In this document: piece after piece, positions 23,731 through 43,058 of the stretch
How the letters are laid out: each line of letters begins with the position of its first letter
How positions within the stretch are numbered: the first letter of the stretch is position 1
Virus record (IMG/VR): IMGVR_UViG_3300035665_000001
Location: 1 to 64,000 of that record
Reading direction: 5' to 3' (one strand)
DNA length: 64,000 nucleotides
Program-made: the position numbers and the translations under genes
The notes under the pieces: generated by a model
What the model saw: the letters and a program-made list of their open reading frames with translations, nothing else
What the model was told of the DNA's origin: nothing
Databases searched by the model: none

Positions 23731-24243
23731 TCACGAGTCCCAAAAATCTCGATAATCTAACCCAAATTTATAAGGATTAACTTTATTAAGTCCAATAACA
23801 TAAAAAATATAAGATGCCACCCCCGATCCACGCATAAAATATACACCTGCCGATGTTTTATCAAGGTGACGTTTTAATAAAAAAGCCATTTTTAGTAATA
23901 ATTCATTATGATTATGTTTACATATATAGTTAAATTCTTCACGAATGTAATCAGAACTATCAGGAAACTTTTGAATCAATTGTGTAATTTCTTTTTCCAA
24001 ATCAACATAATTTAACAATGAATAGTTAAAAGGTTTAATATTATCACTAAAAACTTTAATTCCATTAGATGATGCATACATTAAATCTCGTTCATCATCT
24101 GAAATATACTCTGCATATGACCCCAACATATCAGACACCTTTTCTAAATTTAAACCAGAATTCATTATAAACGAATTAGAATAAAATAGTTTGTTATGTT
24201 CATCCGAATAAATTAAACCTTCTGCCAATTTTTTCATAACCAT
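23731..24243 (-). CDS. DNA polymerase III alpha (DnaE)-like fragment carrying the RGS motif
   Basis: MRGSGVASYIFYVIGLNKVNPYKFGLDYRDF corresponds to DnaE GRGS.AGSLV.Y.LGIT.VDP....L.FERF. Confidence 0.8.
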   Translation of the reverse strand: MVMKKLAEGLIYSDEHNKLFYSNSFIMNSGLNLEKVSDMLGSYAEYISDDERDLMYASSNGIKVFSDNIKPFNYSLLNYVDLEKEITQLIQKFPDSSDYIREEFNYICKHNHNELLLKMAFLLKRHLDKTSAGVYFMRGSGVASYIFYVIGLNKVNPYKFGLDYRDFWDS

Positions 24244-24687: not shown

Positions 24688-25290
24688 CTATTGTTCCCCC
24701 GAAATCATACTAAAAACTCTATCTGGTCGTTCATCAACAATAATATTTTTTATTTTATTAACTACTTGAGCATCATCATGTATTGCGTTAACAAGGGTAT
24801 AAAGTAAATCTCGATTATTATCTTTTTCTACTAATAAAGTTGCATTTTTCAGTTTTGCCTGATAATAACATGGAGTAATAATAACACCATTAACCATAGT
24901 AATTATAGGTGCTATTTCATCAAACGCAGTTGGGTTTATTTCAATAGTAAAACCATATGGATGTTCTAAAATAACCCAGGCAGTTGATGTTCCATGACGC
25001 AGACTACGAAATTTCCAACCACTTCGATATTTTTCTTCAATAATAAAAGTTCGAATTTTTGATGAAACACGCCAATTTCCACGCCAATTTTCAAATGACA
25101 TAGGTAAACTACCATTCTTATTCAACCGCACCATAAAACCAACATCACCATGAACTTTTAATAAAAACTCATCATCATTTAATTTCTTAATTTTTTTAAT
25201 ATCATCAATATCAATTTCTCTAATATCATCAACTTCTGTTATATCAATCATACTACACCATTTTTTAATTGTTGAATTTTGAAAAATCAT
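24688..25290 (-). CDS. Hypothetical phage protein
   Basis: ORF overlapping the upstream helicase fragment; start uncertain. Confidence 0.7.
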   Translation of the reverse strand: MIFQNSTIKKWCSMIDITEVDDIREIDIDDIKKIKKLNDDEFLLKVHGDVGFMVRLNKNGSLPMSFENWRGNWRVSSKIRTFIIEEKYRSGWKFRSLRHGTSTAWVILEHPYGFTIEINPTAFDEIAPIITMVNGVIITPCYYQAKLKNATLLVEKDNNRDLLYTLVNAIHDDAQVVNKIKNIIVDERPDRVFSMISGEQ

Positions 25291-26410
25291 CTAAATCGAT
25301 GAAACCTTTTTTTATACCATTATCAATAATACGCTCTAATTTACCTTTATAAAACAATTCACTCATTTCAGACTGTTTTAAATCCCATATAACTAAGTTT
25401 TTCTTTGGTCTAGTAACAGCAGTATAAACTACACGTTTTTCCTCATCAATATTATAAAACCCATCCTCTACCTGTTCAAGTATCGAAAAATCATAAATAA
25501 AAATCACGTTATCCCACTGCAACCCTTTAGCCTTATGCACCGTCATCAATTGTACCTTGTGTGCAGATTTTTCTTCTAAGAATTGTGCCTCGAATAACAT
25601 TTCTTCTAACGCCTCCATCCAATTACTTAATCCCTCTCGATTTTTAACCTCATTTAAATCTCTATAAAATCTTTTCAAAGAATGTTCTACTTGTTCAACA
25701 GTTTTAGTAGGAGATTCAATCATTTTCGCAATTTCTGGAATCGCCAAATGAAAACTACCAAATTCCAAATGTTTGTAAATACTACATATTTCTGGTATTT
25801 GTTTAACATCAGAAAACATATTACTAATATCCTGCATACTAGTACATTTGCTTATACCAGAAGCAATTTTCAAAGGGATACCACCCTTAGCCATCTTAAT
25901 AATATCAACAACAATAGATTTATTATATCCATGACTAACTATCGACAGCATATTCATCAGAAATTTTACTTCAGCTCTTTTAAGAATATCAAATTCTGTG
26001 TGTAGATAATATGGAATTTGTAACTTACCCAATATTTTTGCGAGTTGTTTTATAGCCGCATTAGTTCTAGCCAATATACATGTTTGATGTAGTGGTTTAT
26101 CAAGCAACTTTAATTCATCAATAAATTCCTCAGAATCGTAAATATTGTAAACATCACCGGCATGTGTATTGGCGGCTTTTGAAATTTTAGATTCGTCCAA
26201 TGAGTCATTATTAAAATCAATAGTATCAGCAATTTCATTTGCAAGAGAAACAATTTCAGGTGATGATCTAAAATTATAACTTAAAATTTCAACGGTTGGA
26301 TTAAAATCATCTATAAACCTACTCATCAGTTTTGGTTGAGAACCCCGAAACCCATATATGCTCTGTTTTACATCACCCATCATTACCAATTTAGCTTTGT
26401 TTGAATTCAT
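25265..26410 (-). CDS. UvrD/PcrA-like SF1 helicase, C-terminal fragment (motifs III-VI)
   Basis: GDVKQSIYGFRGS (III), NFRSSPEI (IV), ILARTN (IVa), MTVHKAKGLQW (V), EEKRVVYTAVTRPK (VI). Own AAGGA SD 9 nt before the ATG. Confidence 0.9.
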   Translation of the reverse strand: MNSNKAKLVMMGDVKQSIYGFRGSQPKLMSRFIDDFNPTVEILSYNFRSSPEIVSLANEIADTIDFNNDSLDESKISKAANTHAGDVYNIYDSEEFIDELKLLDKPLHQTCILARTNAAIKQLAKILGKLQIPYYLHTEFDILKRAEVKFLMNMLSIVSHGYNKSIVVDIIKMAKGGIPLKIASGISKCTSMQDISNMFSDVKQIPEICSIYKHLEFGSFHLAIPEIAKMIESPTKTVEQVEHSLKRFYRDLNEVKNREGLSNWMEALEEMLFEAQFLEEKSAHKVQLMTVHKAKGLQWDNVIFIYDFSILEQVEDGFYNIDEEKRVVYTAVTRPKKNLVIWDLKQSEMSELFYKGKLERIIDNGIKKGFIDLDDFSKFNN

Positions 26411-27368
26411 AATCTAGTTTCCTTTCGATACTTTCATTGTATTTTATTCGTATTAATTTAATATTTTTTTTACTGCAATAATCATCTTTGAGTTTATCGT
26501 TATCCTGGCGATGTTTTAATTTTTGTTGTTTTTCACACTCAGACAAATCTAATTTTTTAGAAAAAGGATAATATTCGAAATGATGAATACCATCAAATTC
26601 AATTATAATATTTTGTTGTGGTAAATAAAAATCATACCTTAATATTGAATACTTAGATTTTCCTCTTAAATCCGAAAATGTTTTTTCTCTTTCAAATTGA
26701 ATATTATTATTCTCCAAATATTCTCGTATTTTGCGTTCACCATGACTCTTGTCAGTAAAACAATTTGGACATCCTAAACTCCCCAAATGATCCCTACCCT
26801 TTCTTTGAAATTGATAACCACATTTCAAGCATTCAATATCAACATCACTATGTTTTCCCAAATAATTCACATACAAAAAAACATCACCAAATATTTTAAC
26901 AGACTCAAGTAAATAATTATCGAATGATATTCTATTTTTTTTGGAAATTTTAGTATTAACACATCGGTCATTTGGACAACCATGTCCAGAAAGATGATTG
27001 CCAGGTATTTGGTAGAATAACGAATTACATTGTAAACACAAAATCCCAATTTTAGTCAAACTGTTAATATAATTTGAGTCAACATACTCATACATATCAC
27101 CATGAACTTTTTTTGCTTTGTTCACAAACTCTCCAAAAGTGTAGGTGTTATGCTTTGCCAACTGTTTATATTGGCATTGTTTGCAACCATGCCCTTTTTG
27201 ATGACTACTATAATTTTGTTCAAAAACTATATTACAAACCTTACAAAAAATTTTAATTTTTCTTAAATTTTTAGTTGAAAACTCATCAGGCACTAATTCA
27301 TAGGAATACTTTAATTTTTGGTCATTGGAAACCTTTTTCAAAAAATCAACTTTCTTCAATATCAACAC
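26391..27368 (-). CDS. Putative homing endonuclease (zinc-ribbon repeats plus C-terminal PD-(D/E)XK/Vsr-like domain) inserted in the helicase gene
   Basis: Repeated CxxC...H..G.GC modules, KKVHGDMYEY, and SHGERKIREYL...LRYDFYLP..NIIIEFDGIHH. Confidence 0.8.
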   Translation of the reverse strand: MLILKKVDFLKKVSNDQKLKYSYELVPDEFSTKNLRKIKIFCKVCNIVFEQNYSSHQKGHGCKQCQYKQLAKHNTYTFGEFVNKAKKVHGDMYEYVDSNYINSLTKIGILCLQCNSLFYQIPGNHLSGHGCPNDRCVNTKISKKNRISFDNYLLESVKIFGDVFLYVNYLGKHSDVDIECLKCGYQFQRKGRDHLGSLGCPNCFTDKSHGERKIREYLENNNIQFEREKTFSDLRGKSKYSILRYDFYLPQQNIIIEFDGIHHFEYYPFSKKLDLSECEKQQKLKHRQDNDKLKDDYCSKKNIKLIRIKYNESIERKLDYEFKQS

Positions 27369-28074
27369 CAGTAATATTTCTTAAACTAATAAGAAAATGA
27401 TATTGGGCATAATTAAGATCTTGAGCCTCATCAGTAATAATGTATTTTACATTCTGAAAAGTAGCACGAACCCTATCAAAACAATCCGCATCATCCAAAA
27501 CAAAATTAGCCAAGTGAATCATAAAATCAAACATAACCAAATTATTTTTAATCAGATATTCTAGCAATCTAAGAGTTTCATCATCAGTAAAATCCTCCAA
27601 CTGTAAATCTTGCGATACATTACTAATAAATTGTTTGTTAAATGTACCTTTTTCCTTCTTTTTGCCATATTTTTTAAATTCTTCTTCCATAAATGCTTCA
27701 GGAAATTCATGCACTATTGTTGGAACAACGGTATAACCAATATCCTGAAAATAAGGTTTTATCAATTCATTCCAGCAAAAAGAATGAATAGTCGAAATGT
27801 ATTTGAAATCATACTTTTGCTTTTCAAAAAATTTATTAACCCTTTCTTTTAGCTCGTTAGCAGCTTTTCGAGTAAAAGAAAATGCAACAATCTCATTAGG
27901 TTTAACACCTTGATTGATTTTATCACTAATAAATTCTACACATGAAGTTGTTTTTCCTGATCCCGCAGCAGCTAAACATAGTACGTGTTTATCCCTTGTA
28001 GAAGCAAATTGTTGTTGTTCATCAGTTAAATTACTTTTCTTACTCACTGGGTTGCTCCGAATTAATTGTTTCAA
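27346..28074 (-). CDS. UvrD/PcrA-like SF1 helicase, N-terminal fragment (Q motif, I, Ia, II)
   Basis: LTDEQQ, AAAGSGKTT, FSFTRKAANELKER, STIHSFC, ITDEAQDLN..QY. Confidence 0.9.
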   Translation of the reverse strand: MKQLIRSNPVSKKSNLTDEQQQFASTRDKHVLCLAAAGSGKTTSCVEFISDKINQGVKPNEIVAFSFTRKAANELKERVNKFFEKQKYDFKYISTIHSFCWNELIKPYFQDIGYTVVPTIVHEFPEAFMEEEFKKYGKKKEKGTFNKQFISNVSQDLQLEDFTDDETLRLLEYLIKNNLVMFDFMIHLANFVLDDADCFDRVRATFQNVKYIITDEAQDLNYAQYHFLISLRNITGVDIEES

Positions 28075-28153
28075 TTAATCAATTATACTCAATATTTTAG
28101 AAAAAAATATATAAATAGTTTTGATTGTTAATTATACACTAAGGAGTACAAAA

Positions 28154-28402
28154 ATGGCAGAATTGAAAAAAACCCCAATTAGATCAGTTAATGAAGATAT
28201 CATCAGTATGGAATTTGATGTAAATCCAAACATTCCTACTGCAAACTATAGCAATGAAACGGCTGAAAGAATTCAACAAGCAATTGTTAAAAAATTGAGA
28301 GCTGAGAAACTGAAAAAAATGATTGAATCTGAATTAAAACAAGATACAAAAGTTCTTGATGGTGAAAGTTTAGGATTCTCATTCACATTCAATAGTATGT
28401 AA
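28154..28402 (+). CDS. Hypothetical late protein
   Basis: AAGGAG SD before ATG 28154; TATAAATA at 28110-28117. Confidence 0.7.
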   Translation: MAELKKTPIRSVNEDIISMEFDVNPNIPTANYSNETAERIQQAIVKKLRAEKLKKMIESELKQDTKVLDGESLGFSFTFNSM

Positions 28403-41210: not shown

Positions 41211-43058
41211 TCACATTCTTGGGTTTACTGATATAGTAGATATACCACGCGATTTAGTAACCATAATAATCTCTTTAACTTTTTCTTTAATTTCCTCTCT
41301 ATGAGAAATCAGATACACTTTCATTTTTTCCTGCTTAGAAACATTCTTAATAAAAGTAAATACCGATTCTAATAAAGTACCATTTATACCACTATCTAAC
41401 ACCTCATCCATAAAAATAGCATCAAATTCAACATTATTTTTCAATTTAAATACTTTCATCAACGCCATCATTAACATAATGTTGCCGATTCTTTTCTCAC
41501 CATTTGATAATGATCCCGGATTAACTTCCTTACCCAATTTCATTACTCTGATTGTAAAATCGGGATTAAATTGTAGATGAATATTATAATCGGGTATCAA
41601 TTTTTTAAAATTTCTAAGAATTTCATTTGTTTGTTTGATATATCTTCTAAGAAATTTTCCCCTATTTTTAGGTTCCTCAGCTATTTTAATATAATTTTTC
41701 AAATCAGTTATAACTTCAACAACTTTATCTATAGTGGATAAATCAATCTCTCGTATAAGTTCTCTATTAGCATCAATTTCAGTTAAAAAATGATTTTCTT
41801 GATTAATAACCTGTTCCAATTCTTTTTTAATGTTTGTTAGCACTATATCAATGTTATCAAGTTCTTTTTTATCAACAGTTAACTCAATCTGATCAAGTGC
41901 ATCTTTTATTTCCTGTAACAGTGATTTTTTTTCCGTTAACGATTTTTTAATTTTTGTTTCCGATTCTTCGTGCTTGGATACACTTTTATCTATCGATTTC
42001 ATTTTCGATTCATATGATTTCAACTTTTCATCACTGGCCAATATCGCAGATGCATCCTGCCACGTTTGTTCACATGTGGGACAAATACTATCTTTTAAAG
42101 ATTTATTTTTTTTCTTTTCACTTTCATATTTTTCAGATATAATTTCAAATTCTCGATTTTCACGCTCAATTGCGGAACATATATCTTTTTGTGCAACTTT
42201 TAATTCAGAAATACTTGCAGATATATTAATCTTATGTTCATTTAACTCATTGACAAAATCATATTTTTCTTTTTCAGTTGCAAAATCAATGCTGGCATAA
42301 AAATCAATTTTGTTATTCAATTCTGCAATCTCTTTTTTTCTTCTGGATTCAAAACGGTCATATGACGTTTGTAATCTTACAATTTGTTCTTGTATTTGCT
42401 CATTGGAATATTTTATTTCTTTTGCACTCGATTCTAAATCTGCAAGTTTTACTTGTTCATCTCGCAATTTATCTTTAATATCCGCTAGTTGCATATTATA
42501 AACATCAAAATTAAAAATATTCTCCAACACCTTTTTCTGGCTAGATGGCAGCATATTTAAAAACGGTTTATTATGTTCCGATGCAACTGAAAATAAAGAT
42601 GTTTGTAAAAAAGTTTCAAAATTCATACGAAACAATTTTTGTATCAACACATCATTATCCTTATCATCGGCTTTAGATATATTATGCCATAAATAACCAT
42701 CATTTGCAGTAATATCAGATACCAATCTATACAGATTTAAAACTTTTGGTTTTCTACCTCTTTCAATTTTATATTTGACTTTTTCAACAAAAAATTCTAA
42801 CTCTACTAACGCATCTTTCCCTTTAATATAATTAACGATTTCATTCGCCTTAACATTTGAAACTGTTTCACCAAAAATAGCATATGTTAATGCTGCCATG
42901 AAGGATGATTTACCCGAACCAATTCTCGAACCCTCAGTATCTTTATCAATACCATCAACCAATATTACCGTAGATGAGAAAGTATTAAAATCCACCTCCT
43001 GCATCGCTCCATAACTATAAAAATTCTGAATTCTCAATTTATCAAACTTAATTCTCAT
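41211..43058 (-). CDS. Recombination ATPase, gp46/SbcC/Rad50-like
   Basis: IQNFYSYG, GSGKSS, CPTC zinc hook, LSNGE signature, FMDEVLD, LISH. Confidence 0.93.
   Translation of the reverse strand: MRIKFDKLRIQNFYSYGAMQEVDFNTFSSTVILVDGIDKDTEGSRIGSGKSSFMAALTYAIFGETVSNVKANEIVNYIKGKDALVELEFFVEKVKYKIERGRKPKVLNLYRLVSDITANDGYLWHNISKADDKDNDVLIQKLFRMNFETFLQTSLFSVASEHNKPFLNMLPSSQKKVLENIFNFDVYNMQLADIKDKLRDEQVKLADLESSAKEIKYSNEQIQEQIVRLQTSYDRFESRRKKEIAELNNKIDFYASIDFATEKEKYDFVNELNEHKINISASISELKVAQKDICSAIERENREFEIISEKYESEKKKNKSLKDSICPTCEQTWQDASAILASDEKLKSYESKMKSIDKSVSKHEESETKIKKSLTEKKSLLQEIKDALDQIELTVDKKELDNIDIVLTNIKKELEQVINQENHFLTEIDANRELIREIDLSTIDKVVEVITDLKNYIKIAEEPKNRGKFLRRYIKQTNEILRNFKKLIPDYNIHLQFNPDFTIRVMKLGKEVNPGSLSNGEKRIGNIMLMMALMKVFKLKNNVEFDAIFMDEVLDSGINGTLLESVFTFIKNVSKQEKMKVYLISHREEIKEKVKEIIMVTKSRGISTISVNPRM

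What the first reader, a model, noticed from the sequence alone, without database searches (positions are those of the whole stretch)
25265..28074. UvrD-like helicase fractured by an endonuclease gene with no splicing element
Seen: the N-part ends DEAQD...LRNITG+VDIEES*, and the C-part starts MNSNK+AKLVMMGDVKQSIYGFRG. Removing 971 nt (27366-26396) gives ...NITG-AKLVMMGD, normal motif II-III spacing. The endonuclease ORF fills the entire insert and overlaps both halves, leaving no room for a group I core, and there are no intein residues. The C-part has its own SD, and all helicase motifs are intact. Known: Aeh1 nrdA is split by mobE and works as two polypeptides. Inference: a two-chain SF1 helicase split within RecA domain 1A, or an unrecognised RNA-level or ribosomal rejoining mechanism.
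Basis: partly seen in the sequence, partly recalled or inferred. Interest (0 to 1): 0.75.

Follow-up and report, generated by a model that had tools for sequence, protein, structure and literature searches.

The report
Phage helicase split by homing endonuclease
A selfish endonuclease gene has inserted into the only UvrD-type helicase gene of a freshwater jumbo phage, and relatives indicate the helicase keeps working as two separately made proteins, even where the endonuclease was later lost.

Summary
On the minus strand, a UvrD/PcrA-type helicase is cut between motifs II and III. The pieces are an N-part (28074-27346) and a C-part (26410-25265). A 325-aa endonuclease ORF (27368-26391) lies between them and overlaps both. 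I found no intron (Rfam, permissive search) and no intein. One correction: the insert is 956 nt (27366-26411), not 971 nt.

About 35 related metagenomic loci explain the locus. Most relatives have an intact helicase of about 606 aa. Five lineages carry the same N-endonuclease-C layout, with endonucleases only 51-70% identical to each other. Three lineages have lost the endonuclease (one keeps a remnant) but stay split, retaining a stop codon, a GAGGA ribosome-binding site and an ATG. Both halves are as constrained in split lineages as in intact ones. One split allele is 98-100% identical to an intact allele except next to the insert, which marks a recent homing event.

The endonuclease has three zinc-finger modules and a Vsr-like nuclease domain.

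Verdict: this is a gene fractured by a free-standing homing endonuclease, and the helicase is made as two chains. That is a new example of a known kind (Aeh1 nrdA/mobE; the intein-less SbcD case of Dassa 2009). No RNA-level or ribosomal rejoining is needed. Protein assembly and enzyme activity have not been tested.

The parts
27346..28074 (-). Helicase N-part (242 aa plus stop, TTG start). It carries the Walker A motif AGSGKT, motifs Ia and II (DEAQD) and the 1B-like insertion. Native sequence ends at the GGT codon (27369-27367). The tail VDIEES and the TGA stop (27348-27346) come from the insert.
   Evidence: PF00580 positions 1-235, 3.6e-29; aligns to PcrA residues 10-236.
26411..27366 (-). 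The inserted mobile DNA (956 nt), bounded by comparison with intact alleles.
   Evidence: 22 + 11 = 33 residues restores the spacing seen in the intact relatives.
26391..27368 (-). Free-standing homing endonuclease ORF (longest form 325 aa from GTG 27368; the likely start is TTG 27359). It has three treble-clef CxxC...H..GHGCxxC zinc-finger modules and a C-terminal Vsr-like nuclease domain (DFYLP...IEFDGIHH...ND). Its last 6 codons overlap the first codons of the C-part.
   Evidence: phrog_559, 2.2e-55; pLDDT 91.8; Vsr 1CW0, I-Bth0305I 3R3P, AbaSI at the top; AbaSI nuclease core, E 0.003.
26420..26426 (-). Ribosome-binding site (GAAAGGA) for the C-part, lying inside the 3' end of the endonuclease ORF. 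The equivalent GAGGA is kept in every split relative, including those that lost the endonuclease.
   Evidence: The region is unstructured as RNA.
25265..26410 (-). Helicase C-part (381 aa, ATG start). It carries the last strand of domain 1A, motif III (GDVKQSIYGFRG), the 2A/2B domains and motifs IV-VI.
   Evidence: PF00580 positions 238-270; PF13361 1.2e-31; aligns to UvrD from residue 240 and PcrA from 247.

Best explanation
A free-standing homing endonuclease gene, with no intron and no intein around it, sits inside the only UvrD/PcrA-type helicase gene of a ~306-kb freshwater myovirus-type jumbo phage.

Inferred mechanism of spread: during mixed infection the endonuclease cuts endonuclease-free helicase alleles near the motif II-III coding region. 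Repair from the endonuclease-bearing genome copies the gene, together with roughly 120-180 bp of flanking helicase sequence on each side.

What the cassette does to the host gene (shown in the sequence): it ends the upstream half with a stop 1-6 codons after a conserved Thr-Gly. Its own 3' end supplies a GAGGA-type ribosome-binding site and an ATG for the downstream half. The helicase is therefore made as two polypeptides.

Inferred outcome: the two chains reassemble non-covalently into a working SF1 motor. The N-part supplies motifs I-II and domain 1B. The C-part supplies motif III and domains 2A/2B.

Later history (shown by relatives): the endonuclease can decay or be deleted, leaving a permanently two-piece helicase.

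Status of each step. Shown here: the anatomy, the absence of intron or intein, recurrence in relatives, the endonuclease-less scars, purifying selection, and the recombination mosaic. Inferred: cleavage activity and target site, physical assembly of the halves, and ATPase or unwinding activity.
For: Anatomy.

No intron or intein: Rfam found nothing at E<=10, and no intein domain or extra residues appear against the intact homologue.

Relatives: among 71 close helicase clusters, 12 are C-part-sized and 59 are intact.

Same layout elsewhere: N-endonuclease-C occurs in the window, L007, L018/L033, L032 and L034. All four closest endonuclease orthologues (51-56% identical to the window's) sit at this site.

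Endonuclease lost, split kept: L003/L004 has a 48-nt spacer and comes from two independent assemblies. L015 has a 41-nt spacer. L006 has a 120-nt spacer that still reads as the endonuclease C-terminus.

Selection: between split lineages pS is 0.6-0.8 (saturated) while pN is 0.08-0.25, and no ORF is broken. Median pN/pS for split-split pairs is 0.27 (N) and 0.21 (C), against 0.29 and 0.32 for intact-intact pairs. The flanks that travel with the endonuclease give ~0.30, and the endonuclease itself has dN/dS 0.09-0.22.

Homing signature: L007 (split) and L031 (intact) are 98-100% identical at the nucleotide level except ~60 codons upstream and ~40 codons downstream of the insert. There identity falls to 50-80%, and L007 instead resembles other split alleles. 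The junction-flank tree and the distal-gene tree disagree as a mobile cassette predicts.

No backup gene: this is the only UvrD-family gene in the 306-kb record.

Assembly prediction: ipSAE 0.82 against a best control of 0.00. That mark was reached by 51 of 78 solved complexes and 2 of 108 mismatched pairs.

Field persistence: the identical allele appears in lake metagenomes dated 2016, 2020 and 2024.

Precedents: PMC3045599, PMC2677866.
Against: There is no experimental evidence that the two chains bind or unwind DNA. The complex prediction may simply recall the single-chain PcrA/UvrD fold.

Because the cassette moves by homing, some split lineages may be recent converts, so part of the measured constraint may date from periods when the gene was intact.

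Synonymous sites are saturated, so the ratios are rough.

The record is about 85% complete by CheckV, so a second helicase in the missing part cannot be excluded.

The endonuclease has no ATG and no clear ribosome-binding site, so how it is expressed is unclear. Its cleavage site is unknown.

The RNA evidence consists of two short contigs from a single metatranscriptome, and they could be DNA carry-over.
Confidence: 0.8

Rival explanations
1. Recent inactivating insertion: the helicase is a dispensable pseudogene in two pieces, and the halves have not yet had time to decay.
For: Homing can be recent, as the L007/L031 pair shows. Only one genome carries exactly this allele. Many phage accessory helicases are dispensable (general knowledge).
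Against: The split persists in at least 9 distinct loci at 63-88% amino-acid identity with saturated synonymous sites and not one frameshift or stop. Constraint is not relaxed compared with intact relatives. Lineages that lost the endonuclease still keep both ORFs together with the ribosome-binding site and ATG. This is the only UvrD-family gene in the record.
Confidence: 0.07
2. The halves are rejoined at the RNA level by an unrecognised self-splicing or trans-splicing element whose core overlaps the endonuclease ORF.
For: Vsr-like endonucleases do occur inside group I introns, for example I-Bth0305I in recA (PMC3239194). The last exon base before the insert is a T, as is usual at group I 5' splice sites.
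Against: No Rfam intron family matched at E<=10 on either strand. The ORF fills the insert and overlaps both halves. There is no significant RNA structure at either junction (z -1.06 and +0.29). The base before the C-part ATG is T, not the terminal G of group I introns. The endonuclease-less scars are 41-48 nt, too short for a ribozyme, yet keep stop, ribosome-binding site and ATG. No joint was seen, and an RNA-library contig lies inside the insert.
Confidence: 0.03
3. Ribosomes bypass the gap, as in the T4 gene 60 hop, to make a single-chain helicase.
For: The T4 gene 60 hop is itself part of a mobile endonuclease cassette (bioRxiv 10.1101/2022.08.31.505936). In L003 the scar is 48 nt, the two halves lie in the same frame, and a GCT before the stop recurs 66 nt downstream.
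Against: The window's gap is 956 nt. No matching take-off and landing codons recur across loci, and the halves lie in different frames in most loci. A ribosome-binding site and ATG are conserved in every split locus. No stem-loop is present at the N-part end.
Confidence: 0.02
4. The two halves are both functional but no longer act together. For example, the N-part could be a stand-alone ATPase and the C-part an accessory DNA-binding protein.
For: Neither half has been assayed. The constraint measured here would also fit independent functions.
Against: An SF1 ATP site needs motifs I and II from the N-part and motifs IV-VI from the C-part (established SF1 helicase mechanism). All of these motifs stay conserved in both halves. 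The halves always remain adjacent and in the same order. A large shared interface is predicted.
Confidence: 0.05

Closest known systems
Aeromonas phage Aeh1 nrdA-a / mobE / nrdA-b (Friedrich et al. 2007 PNAS, cited in PMC3322345; Crona et al. 2011, PMC3045599)
   Same: A free-standing homing endonuclease is inserted in an essential-type DNA-metabolism gene with no intron or intein. The two halves are translated separately and, in Aeh1, reassemble into an active enzyme. Short terminal tails are created by the insertion.
   Different: The endonuclease here is Vsr-like with zinc fingers, not HNH. The host gene is an SF1 helicase, not a ribonucleotide reductase. The tails are only 1-6 residues, against the longer tails in Aeh1 that were shown to be essential. 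Activity is untested here. This case adds a natural series of alleles: endonuclease present, decayed, or lost.
Intein-less SbcD-like fractured gene with a Vsr-like endonuclease, from the Lake Gatun metagenome (Dassa et al. 2009, PMC2677866)
   Same: A Vsr-like free-standing endonuclease lies between the two halves of a phage-type DNA-repair gene without a split intein. The ORFs overlap, and the source is freshwater.
   Different: The host gene differs. That case has 25- and 9-residue inserted regions at the break, against 1-6 and about 0 here. It was a single locus with no population or selection evidence.
Fractured genes with split inteins (Dassa et al. 2009, PMC2677866)
   Same: The gene layout is the same (host N-part, endonuclease, host C-part). 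The endonuclease superfamily is the same in half of those loci. The setting is phage or metagenomic.
   Different: Those loci carry split-intein halves that ligate the protein. No intein residues exist here, so the product stays as two chains.
I-Bth0305I and the EDxHD homing endonuclease family (Taylor et al. 2011, PMC3239194)
   Same: The architecture is an N-terminal DNA-binding region followed by a C-terminal Vsr-like nuclease. The Foldseek match to 3R3P has probability 1.00 and TM-score by target 0.56.
   Different: I-Bth0305I is intron-encoded and uses NUMOD/helix-turn-helix motifs. This protein is free-standing and uses three treble-clef zinc-finger modules (DUF4379/DUF723). Sequence similarity is too low for phmmer to detect.
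T4 topoisomerase gp39 / mobA / gp60 and the split gp43 polymerase of Aeromonas phage 25 (reviewed in PMC2988022; cited in PMC2677866 and PMC3045599)
   Same: These are replication-enzyme genes split into separately translated pieces, with an endonuclease gene at the break.
   Different: The endonuclease families differ (HNH, GIY-YIG). T4 gene 60 additionally needs a 50-nt ribosomal bypass, for which there is no sign here.

Membership tests
Gene fractured by a free-standing homing endonuclease (genes-in-pieces, Aeh1 nrdA/mobE type) | The host coding sequence is interrupted at a point that is contiguous in homologues, with nothing lost. | tested here: met
   the Pfam profile reads 1-235 then 238-270, and 22+11 = 33 residues equals the intact spacing.
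Gene fractured by a free-standing homing endonuclease (genes-in-pieces, Aeh1 nrdA/mobE type) | The insert is an endonuclease ORF with no intron or intein around it. | tested here: met
   no Rfam intron at E<=10; no intein domain; no extra residues; no junction RNA structure.
Gene fractured by a free-standing homing endonuclease (genes-in-pieces, Aeh1 nrdA/mobE type) | The downstream half has its own translation start signals. | tested here: met
   a GAGGA-type ribosome-binding site 8-11 nt before an ATG in all 9 split loci, kept after endonuclease loss.
Gene fractured by a free-standing homing endonuclease (genes-in-pieces, Aeh1 nrdA/mobE type) | The element is mobile, moving by double-strand-break repair with co-conversion of the flanks. 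| tested here: met
   L007/L031 mosaic: 98-100% identity falling to 50-80% at the flanks; flank tree disagrees with distal tree. Cleavage itself was not tested.
Gene fractured by a free-standing homing endonuclease (genes-in-pieces, Aeh1 nrdA/mobE type) | The two polypeptides assemble into an active enzyme. | not testable with these tools
   Only indirect support: purifying selection and the predicted complex at 0.82 against a control of 0.00.
Fractured gene with split intein (Dassa 2009) | An N-intein at the end of the upstream half and a C-intein at the start of the downstream half. | tested here: not met
   the tail is 6 residues, the C-part starts in native sequence, and there is no intein Pfam hit.
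Group I or group II intron carrying a homing endonuclease | A ribozyme core flanks or overlaps the ORF. | tested here: not met
   (nothing at E<=10). The ORF overlaps both exons. The 41-48 nt scars in L015 and L003 are too short for a ribozyme.
T4 gene 60-type translational bypass cassette | Matched take-off and landing codons, a stop right after take-off, a ~50-nt gap and a take-off stem-loop. | tested here: not met
   the gap is 956 nt, there is no matched codon pair and no stem-loop, and the halves lie in different frames.
UvrD/PcrA/Rep (SF1A) helicase | The N-terminal and C-terminal UvrD domains with motifs I, II, III, V and VI. | tested here: met
   (PF00580 at 102.7 bits; PF13361 at 110.9 bits, both above the curated cut-offs). 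(PcrA, UvrD and Rep are the top PDB hits). The motifs can be read.
Vsr-like / EDxHD homing endonucleases (I-Bth0305I) | A C-terminal nuclease domain with the Vsr fold. | tested here: met
   1CW0 (probability 1.00, TM by target 0.51), 3R3P (1.00, 0.56), plus AbaSI and PvuRts1I. E-values are weak (~0.02); the profile matches the AbaSI nuclease core at E 0.003.
Vsr-like / EDxHD homing endonucleases (I-Bth0305I) | The composite catalytic residues E, D, H, D are conserved. | tested here: inconclusive
   D246, E257 and H263 are invariant, and D291 is nearly invariant, in 56 homologues. D259 is invariant among the 5 orthologues. I did not map these residue by residue onto I-Bth0305I.
Vsr-like / EDxHD homing endonucleases (I-Bth0305I) | An N-terminal NUMOD / helix-turn-helix DNA-binding region. 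| tested here: not met
   the N-terminal region consists of three treble-clef zinc-finger modules (PF14311 DUF4379 / PF05265 DUF723) instead.

The most novel reading that the evidence does not exclude
The split has become a stable, selectable gene architecture that outlives its parasite. The lineage may cycle between fission (endonuclease invasion), a permanent two-gene helicase (endonuclease lost, ribosome-binding site and ATG kept) and re-fusion. The rare intact alleles with a split-like junction and odd motif II-III spacing of 31, 32 or 34 residues (L035, L036, P0055, P0058) would then be healed scars. At least two endonuclease variants and one unrelated small ORF compete for the same site. 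If so, this would be a natural record of endonuclease-driven gene fission and fusion inside a RecA-like motor domain.
Probability: 0.25. Interest if true: 0.6.

Novelty: new member of a known kind. Interest (0 to 1): 0.5.

Why it matters
Genes fractured by free-standing homing endonucleases are known from only a handful of cases, and one (Aeh1 NrdA) has been proven biochemically. This locus adds an SF1 helicase cut inside its motor core, between motifs II and III.

It also comes with an unusually complete natural series at a single site:
- empty sites;
- occupied sites with diverged endonucleases;
- a decaying endonuclease;
- clean scars that remain split;
- a fresh homing event with a visible co-conversion tract.

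That makes two long-standing ideas testable on real alleles: that endonuclease invasion can permanently break genes, and that the endonuclease's own 3' end supplies the translation signals that neutralise the damage.

For helicase mechanism, a natural two-chain UvrD-like motor would be a useful reagent. For metagenome annotation, it warns that half-helicases of ~240 and ~380 aa in jumbo phages are not pseudogenes.

Tried and rejected
- Megablast of the region against GenBank phages found nothing. tblastn gave only ~25% identical helicases. Close relatives exist only in metagenomes.
- A single-protein scan of viral contigs with the C-part found nothing. The N-part and an alignment query did find relatives.
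- Rfam in permissive mode gave only chance-level CRISPR and snoRNA hits, so an intron is rejected.
- The promoter and terminator scan was at chance level (24 found against 28.5 expected; 1 terminator against 1.0), so there is no evidence for internal transcription signals.
- RNA folding at both junctions is not different from shuffled sequence. This rejects a regulatory hairpin or bypass stem-loop, at least in this genome.
- phmmer of the endonuclease against the PDB found nothing meaningful. A fold search and a profile search were needed instead.
- I first expected the split alleles to form one clade. The C-part tree rejects that, forcing at least 6 changes, and co-conversion explains the pattern.
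- The upstream fragment in L005 looked like ribosomal protein bL35. It is instead the C-terminal end of a longer endonuclease variant shared with L040.
- RNA evidence was thin: one metatranscriptome with two short contigs and no joint. This is weak and cannot exclude DNA carry-over.
- dN/dS proper could not be computed for many pairs because pS exceeds 0.75, so I compared raw pN/pS between split and intact pairs instead.


Full report
**1. The observation**

The window is the first 64 kb of a 306,333-bp IMG/VR virus record at about 29% GC. The record encodes a tail sheath, a tape-measure protein and an SbcC-like nuclease, so it is a myovirus-type jumbo phage. It recurs in lake-water metagenomes dated 2016 to 2024.

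Three overlapping ORFs in three different frames lie on the minus strand:
- N-part, 28074-27346, 242 aa
- endonuclease ORF, 27368-26391, 325 aa
- C-part, 26410-25265, 381 aa

The break is clean. Pfam PF00580 covers profile positions 1-235 in the N-part and 238-270 in the C-part, and UvrD_C follows in the C-part. PHROG 1967 splits the same way, at 145-386 and 389-674. The halves align to PcrA residues 10-236 and to UvrD from residue 240 or PcrA from 247. The break therefore falls between motifs II and III. From my knowledge of PcrA, that is in domain 1A.

I found no intron: nothing matched in Rfam at E<=10. I found no intein either: no intein domain, and no extra residues against an intact homologue. 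Contigs from three other lake samples match with zero differences and bridge both junctions, so the arrangement is not an assembly artefact.

**2. Insert boundaries (a correction)**

The related viral contig L002 has an intact 606-aa helicase in the same gene neighbourhood. More than 30 intact relatives have 33 residues from the D of DEAQD to the G of GDxKQ. The N-part up to its Thr-Gly (22 residues) plus the C-part from its Met (11 residues) makes 33.

The insert is therefore 27366-26411, 956 nt. The tail VDIEES and the stop codon come from the insert. The C-part ATG and its GAAAGGA ribosome-binding site lie inside the 3' end of the endonuclease ORF.

**3. What the relatives show**

A search of 5.8 billion proteins with the C-part returned 78 relatives at 55-77% identity. 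Of the 71 analysed, 12 are C-part-sized and 59 are intact at 599-614 aa. The endonuclease's four closest orthologues are only 51-56% identical to it. All four lie between N- and C-parts of this same helicase.

After fetching about 35 loci, I found four states:

a. Intact 'type A' junction: KFTKLLQxxF[ST]...LVKVGD.

b. Split with the endonuclease: the window, L007, L018/L033, L032 and L034.

c. Split without it:
- L003/L004, two independent assemblies, with a 48-nt spacer;
- L015, with a 41-nt spacer;
- L006, with a 120-nt spacer that still reads as the endonuclease C-terminus (GIKMIRIKYIENIEERLHAEFK*, against KLIRIKYNESIERKLDYEFKQS* in the window).

d. A few intact alleles with a split-like 'type B' junction and spacing of 31, 32 or 34 residues (P0049/L035, P0051/L036, P0055, P0058).

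Every split allele ends its N-part at LR[DEN]xT[GS] plus 1-6 residues. Every one starts its C-part with M..S.KA.L[VI]M[VM]GD, preceded by a GAGGA-type ribosome-binding site 8-11 nt upstream. In state (c), that ribosome-binding site is essentially all that survives of the endonuclease gene. This points to selection for independent translation of the C-part.

**4. Selection**

Between split lineages, synonymous sites are saturated (pS 0.6-0.8) while pN is 0.08-0.25 in both halves, and no ORF is broken.

| Comparison | Median pN/pS, N-part | Median pN/pS, C-part |
|---|---|---|
| split vs split (21 pairs) | 0.27 | 0.21 |
| intact vs intact (76 pairs) | 0.29 | 0.32 |

The 60 + 40 codons that travel with the endonuclease give about 0.30. 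The endonuclease is itself constrained (dN/dS 0.09-0.22). The split gene is the only UvrD-family gene in the record.

**5. Mobility**

On a C-part tree the split alleles are scattered, and at least 6 changes of state are forced.

The reason shows in one pair. L007 (split, with endonuclease) and L031 (intact) are 98-100% identical at the nucleotide level across the gene. The exceptions are about 60 codons upstream and 40 codons downstream of the insert. There identity falls to 50-80%, and L007 instead resembles other split alleles at 83-89%. This is a co-conversion tract from a recent homing event into a type A background.

Two trees confirm the mosaic. In the junction flanks, 12 of 13 type A alleles form one starred clade (97*) apart from all split alleles. 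In the distal gene, L007 pairs with L031 (99*) and L015 pairs with L016 (99*). The window, L018 and the intact type B alleles L035 and L036 group together in both trees. Type B may therefore be the native junction of the lineage where the endonuclease first settled, but re-fusion after loss is not excluded.

**6. The endonuclease**

The five orthologues conserve three CxxC...H..GHGCxxC modules (Pfam DUF4379 and DUF723) and a C-terminal DFYLP...IEFDGIHH...ND core. More than 1,000 homologues at 30-40% identity exist, and some sources label them very-short-patch-repair endonucleases.

An AlphaFold model has pLDDT 91.8. Its top PDB matches are Vsr (1CW0), AbaSI, the I-Bth0305I catalytic domain (3R3P) and PvuRts1I. 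Probabilities are 0.97-1.00, the TM-score by target is about 0.5, and the E-values are weak at about 0.02. A family profile aligns the nuclease core to AbaSI at E = 0.003.

This places the protein in the Vsr-like nuclease superfamily. It has the domain order of the EDxHD homing endonucleases (PMC3239194, PMC2677866) but zinc fingers in place of NUMOD/HTH motifs. Alignment with L018 (MLKNDFL) suggests that the window's copy starts at TTG 27359. None of the candidate starts has a clear ribosome-binding site.

**7. Rejoining mechanisms**

- The 41-48 nt scars cannot be ribozymes.
- Junction RNA folds no better than shuffled sequence.
- There are no internal promoter or terminator signals above chance.
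- The one metatranscriptome available holds a contig inside the insert and shows no joint. This is weak evidence.
- Nothing resembles the T4 gene 60 bypass.
- ESMFold2 places the halves together at ipSAE 0.82 against a best control of 0.00. That mark was reached by 51 of 78 solved complexes and 2 of 108 mismatched pairs. The pass may partly be memory of the single-chain fold.

**8. Comparison and verdict**

This locus works like Aeh1 nrdA-a/mobE/nrdA-b (PMC3045599). Its closest published relative is the intein-less SbcD-like locus with a Vsr-like endonuclease from Lake Gatun (PMC2677866). It is not a split-intein fractured gene, not an intron and not a bypass cassette.

It is a new member of a known kind. 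New here are the host gene (an SF1 helicase cut inside its motor core) and the natural series of alleles at one site. That series includes other occupants: a longer endonuclease variant in L040 and L005, and an unrelated 84-aa ORF in L041.

Confidence in the two-chain reading is about 0.8. Assembly of the two chains, helicase activity and endonuclease cleavage all still need experiments.

Noticed in passing
L041:1158-1412; L040:3-239; L005:2-82: The same helicase site holds other inserts in relatives. L041 has an unrelated 84-aa ORF with no family hit. L040 and L005 carry the C-terminal end of a longer endonuclease variant (phrog_3339 4.8e-19; phrog_559 positions 528-602), cut off by contig ends. 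Their C-parts start differently (MSNGCYLVMVGD, MSECRLVMVGD).
   Followed up: partly
L035:2501-4315; L036:2378-4210 (also P0055, P0058): These intact helicases have a split-like 'type B' junction and motif II-III spacing of 31, 32 or 34 residues instead of 33. They could be the native target allele, cleavage-resistant variants, or re-fusions after endonuclease loss. L035 and L036 group with the window in both the flank tree and the distal tree.
   Followed up: partly
window 23731-24243 (-): A 170-aa ORF has a weak DNA polymerase III alpha / phage 'DNA polymerase' hit (phrog_11127, 1.5e-9; PF07733 weak in relatives). It is conserved as a stand-alone ~168-aa gene a few genes downstream of the helicase in all relatives.
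   Followed up: no
window 27346-27366 and 26390-26410; equivalent positions in L003, L006, L007, L015, L018, L032, L034: The N-part tails after the Thr-Gly codon are short and mostly acidic (VDIEES, DD, E, YD, E, ASD). The C-part N-termini are lysine-rich (MNSNKAK, MDSKKAK). This is reminiscent of the oppositely charged tails of Aeh1 NrdA-a/b but much shorter, and it may be chance.
   Followed up: no
window 25100-28300: This stretch occurs with zero differences in contigs from lake metagenomes dated 2016, 2020 and 2024. One freshwater metatranscriptome holds contigs at 27133-27324 (inside the endonuclease ORF) and 27550-27700 (N-part).
   Followed up: partly
window 41211-43058 (-): An SbcC-like protein (phrog_77, 3.4e-76) matches only profile positions 294-954 of 967. 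I did not check whether the N-terminal part is absent or encoded by a separate neighbouring ORF.
   Followed up: no
window 27357-27368 (-): The endonuclease has no ATG start and no clear ribosome-binding site. The candidate starts are GTG 27368, TTG 27365 and TTG 27359. Orthologues start with an ATG that overlaps, or lies 2 nt after, the N-part stop, which suggests weak or translationally coupled expression.
   Followed up: partly
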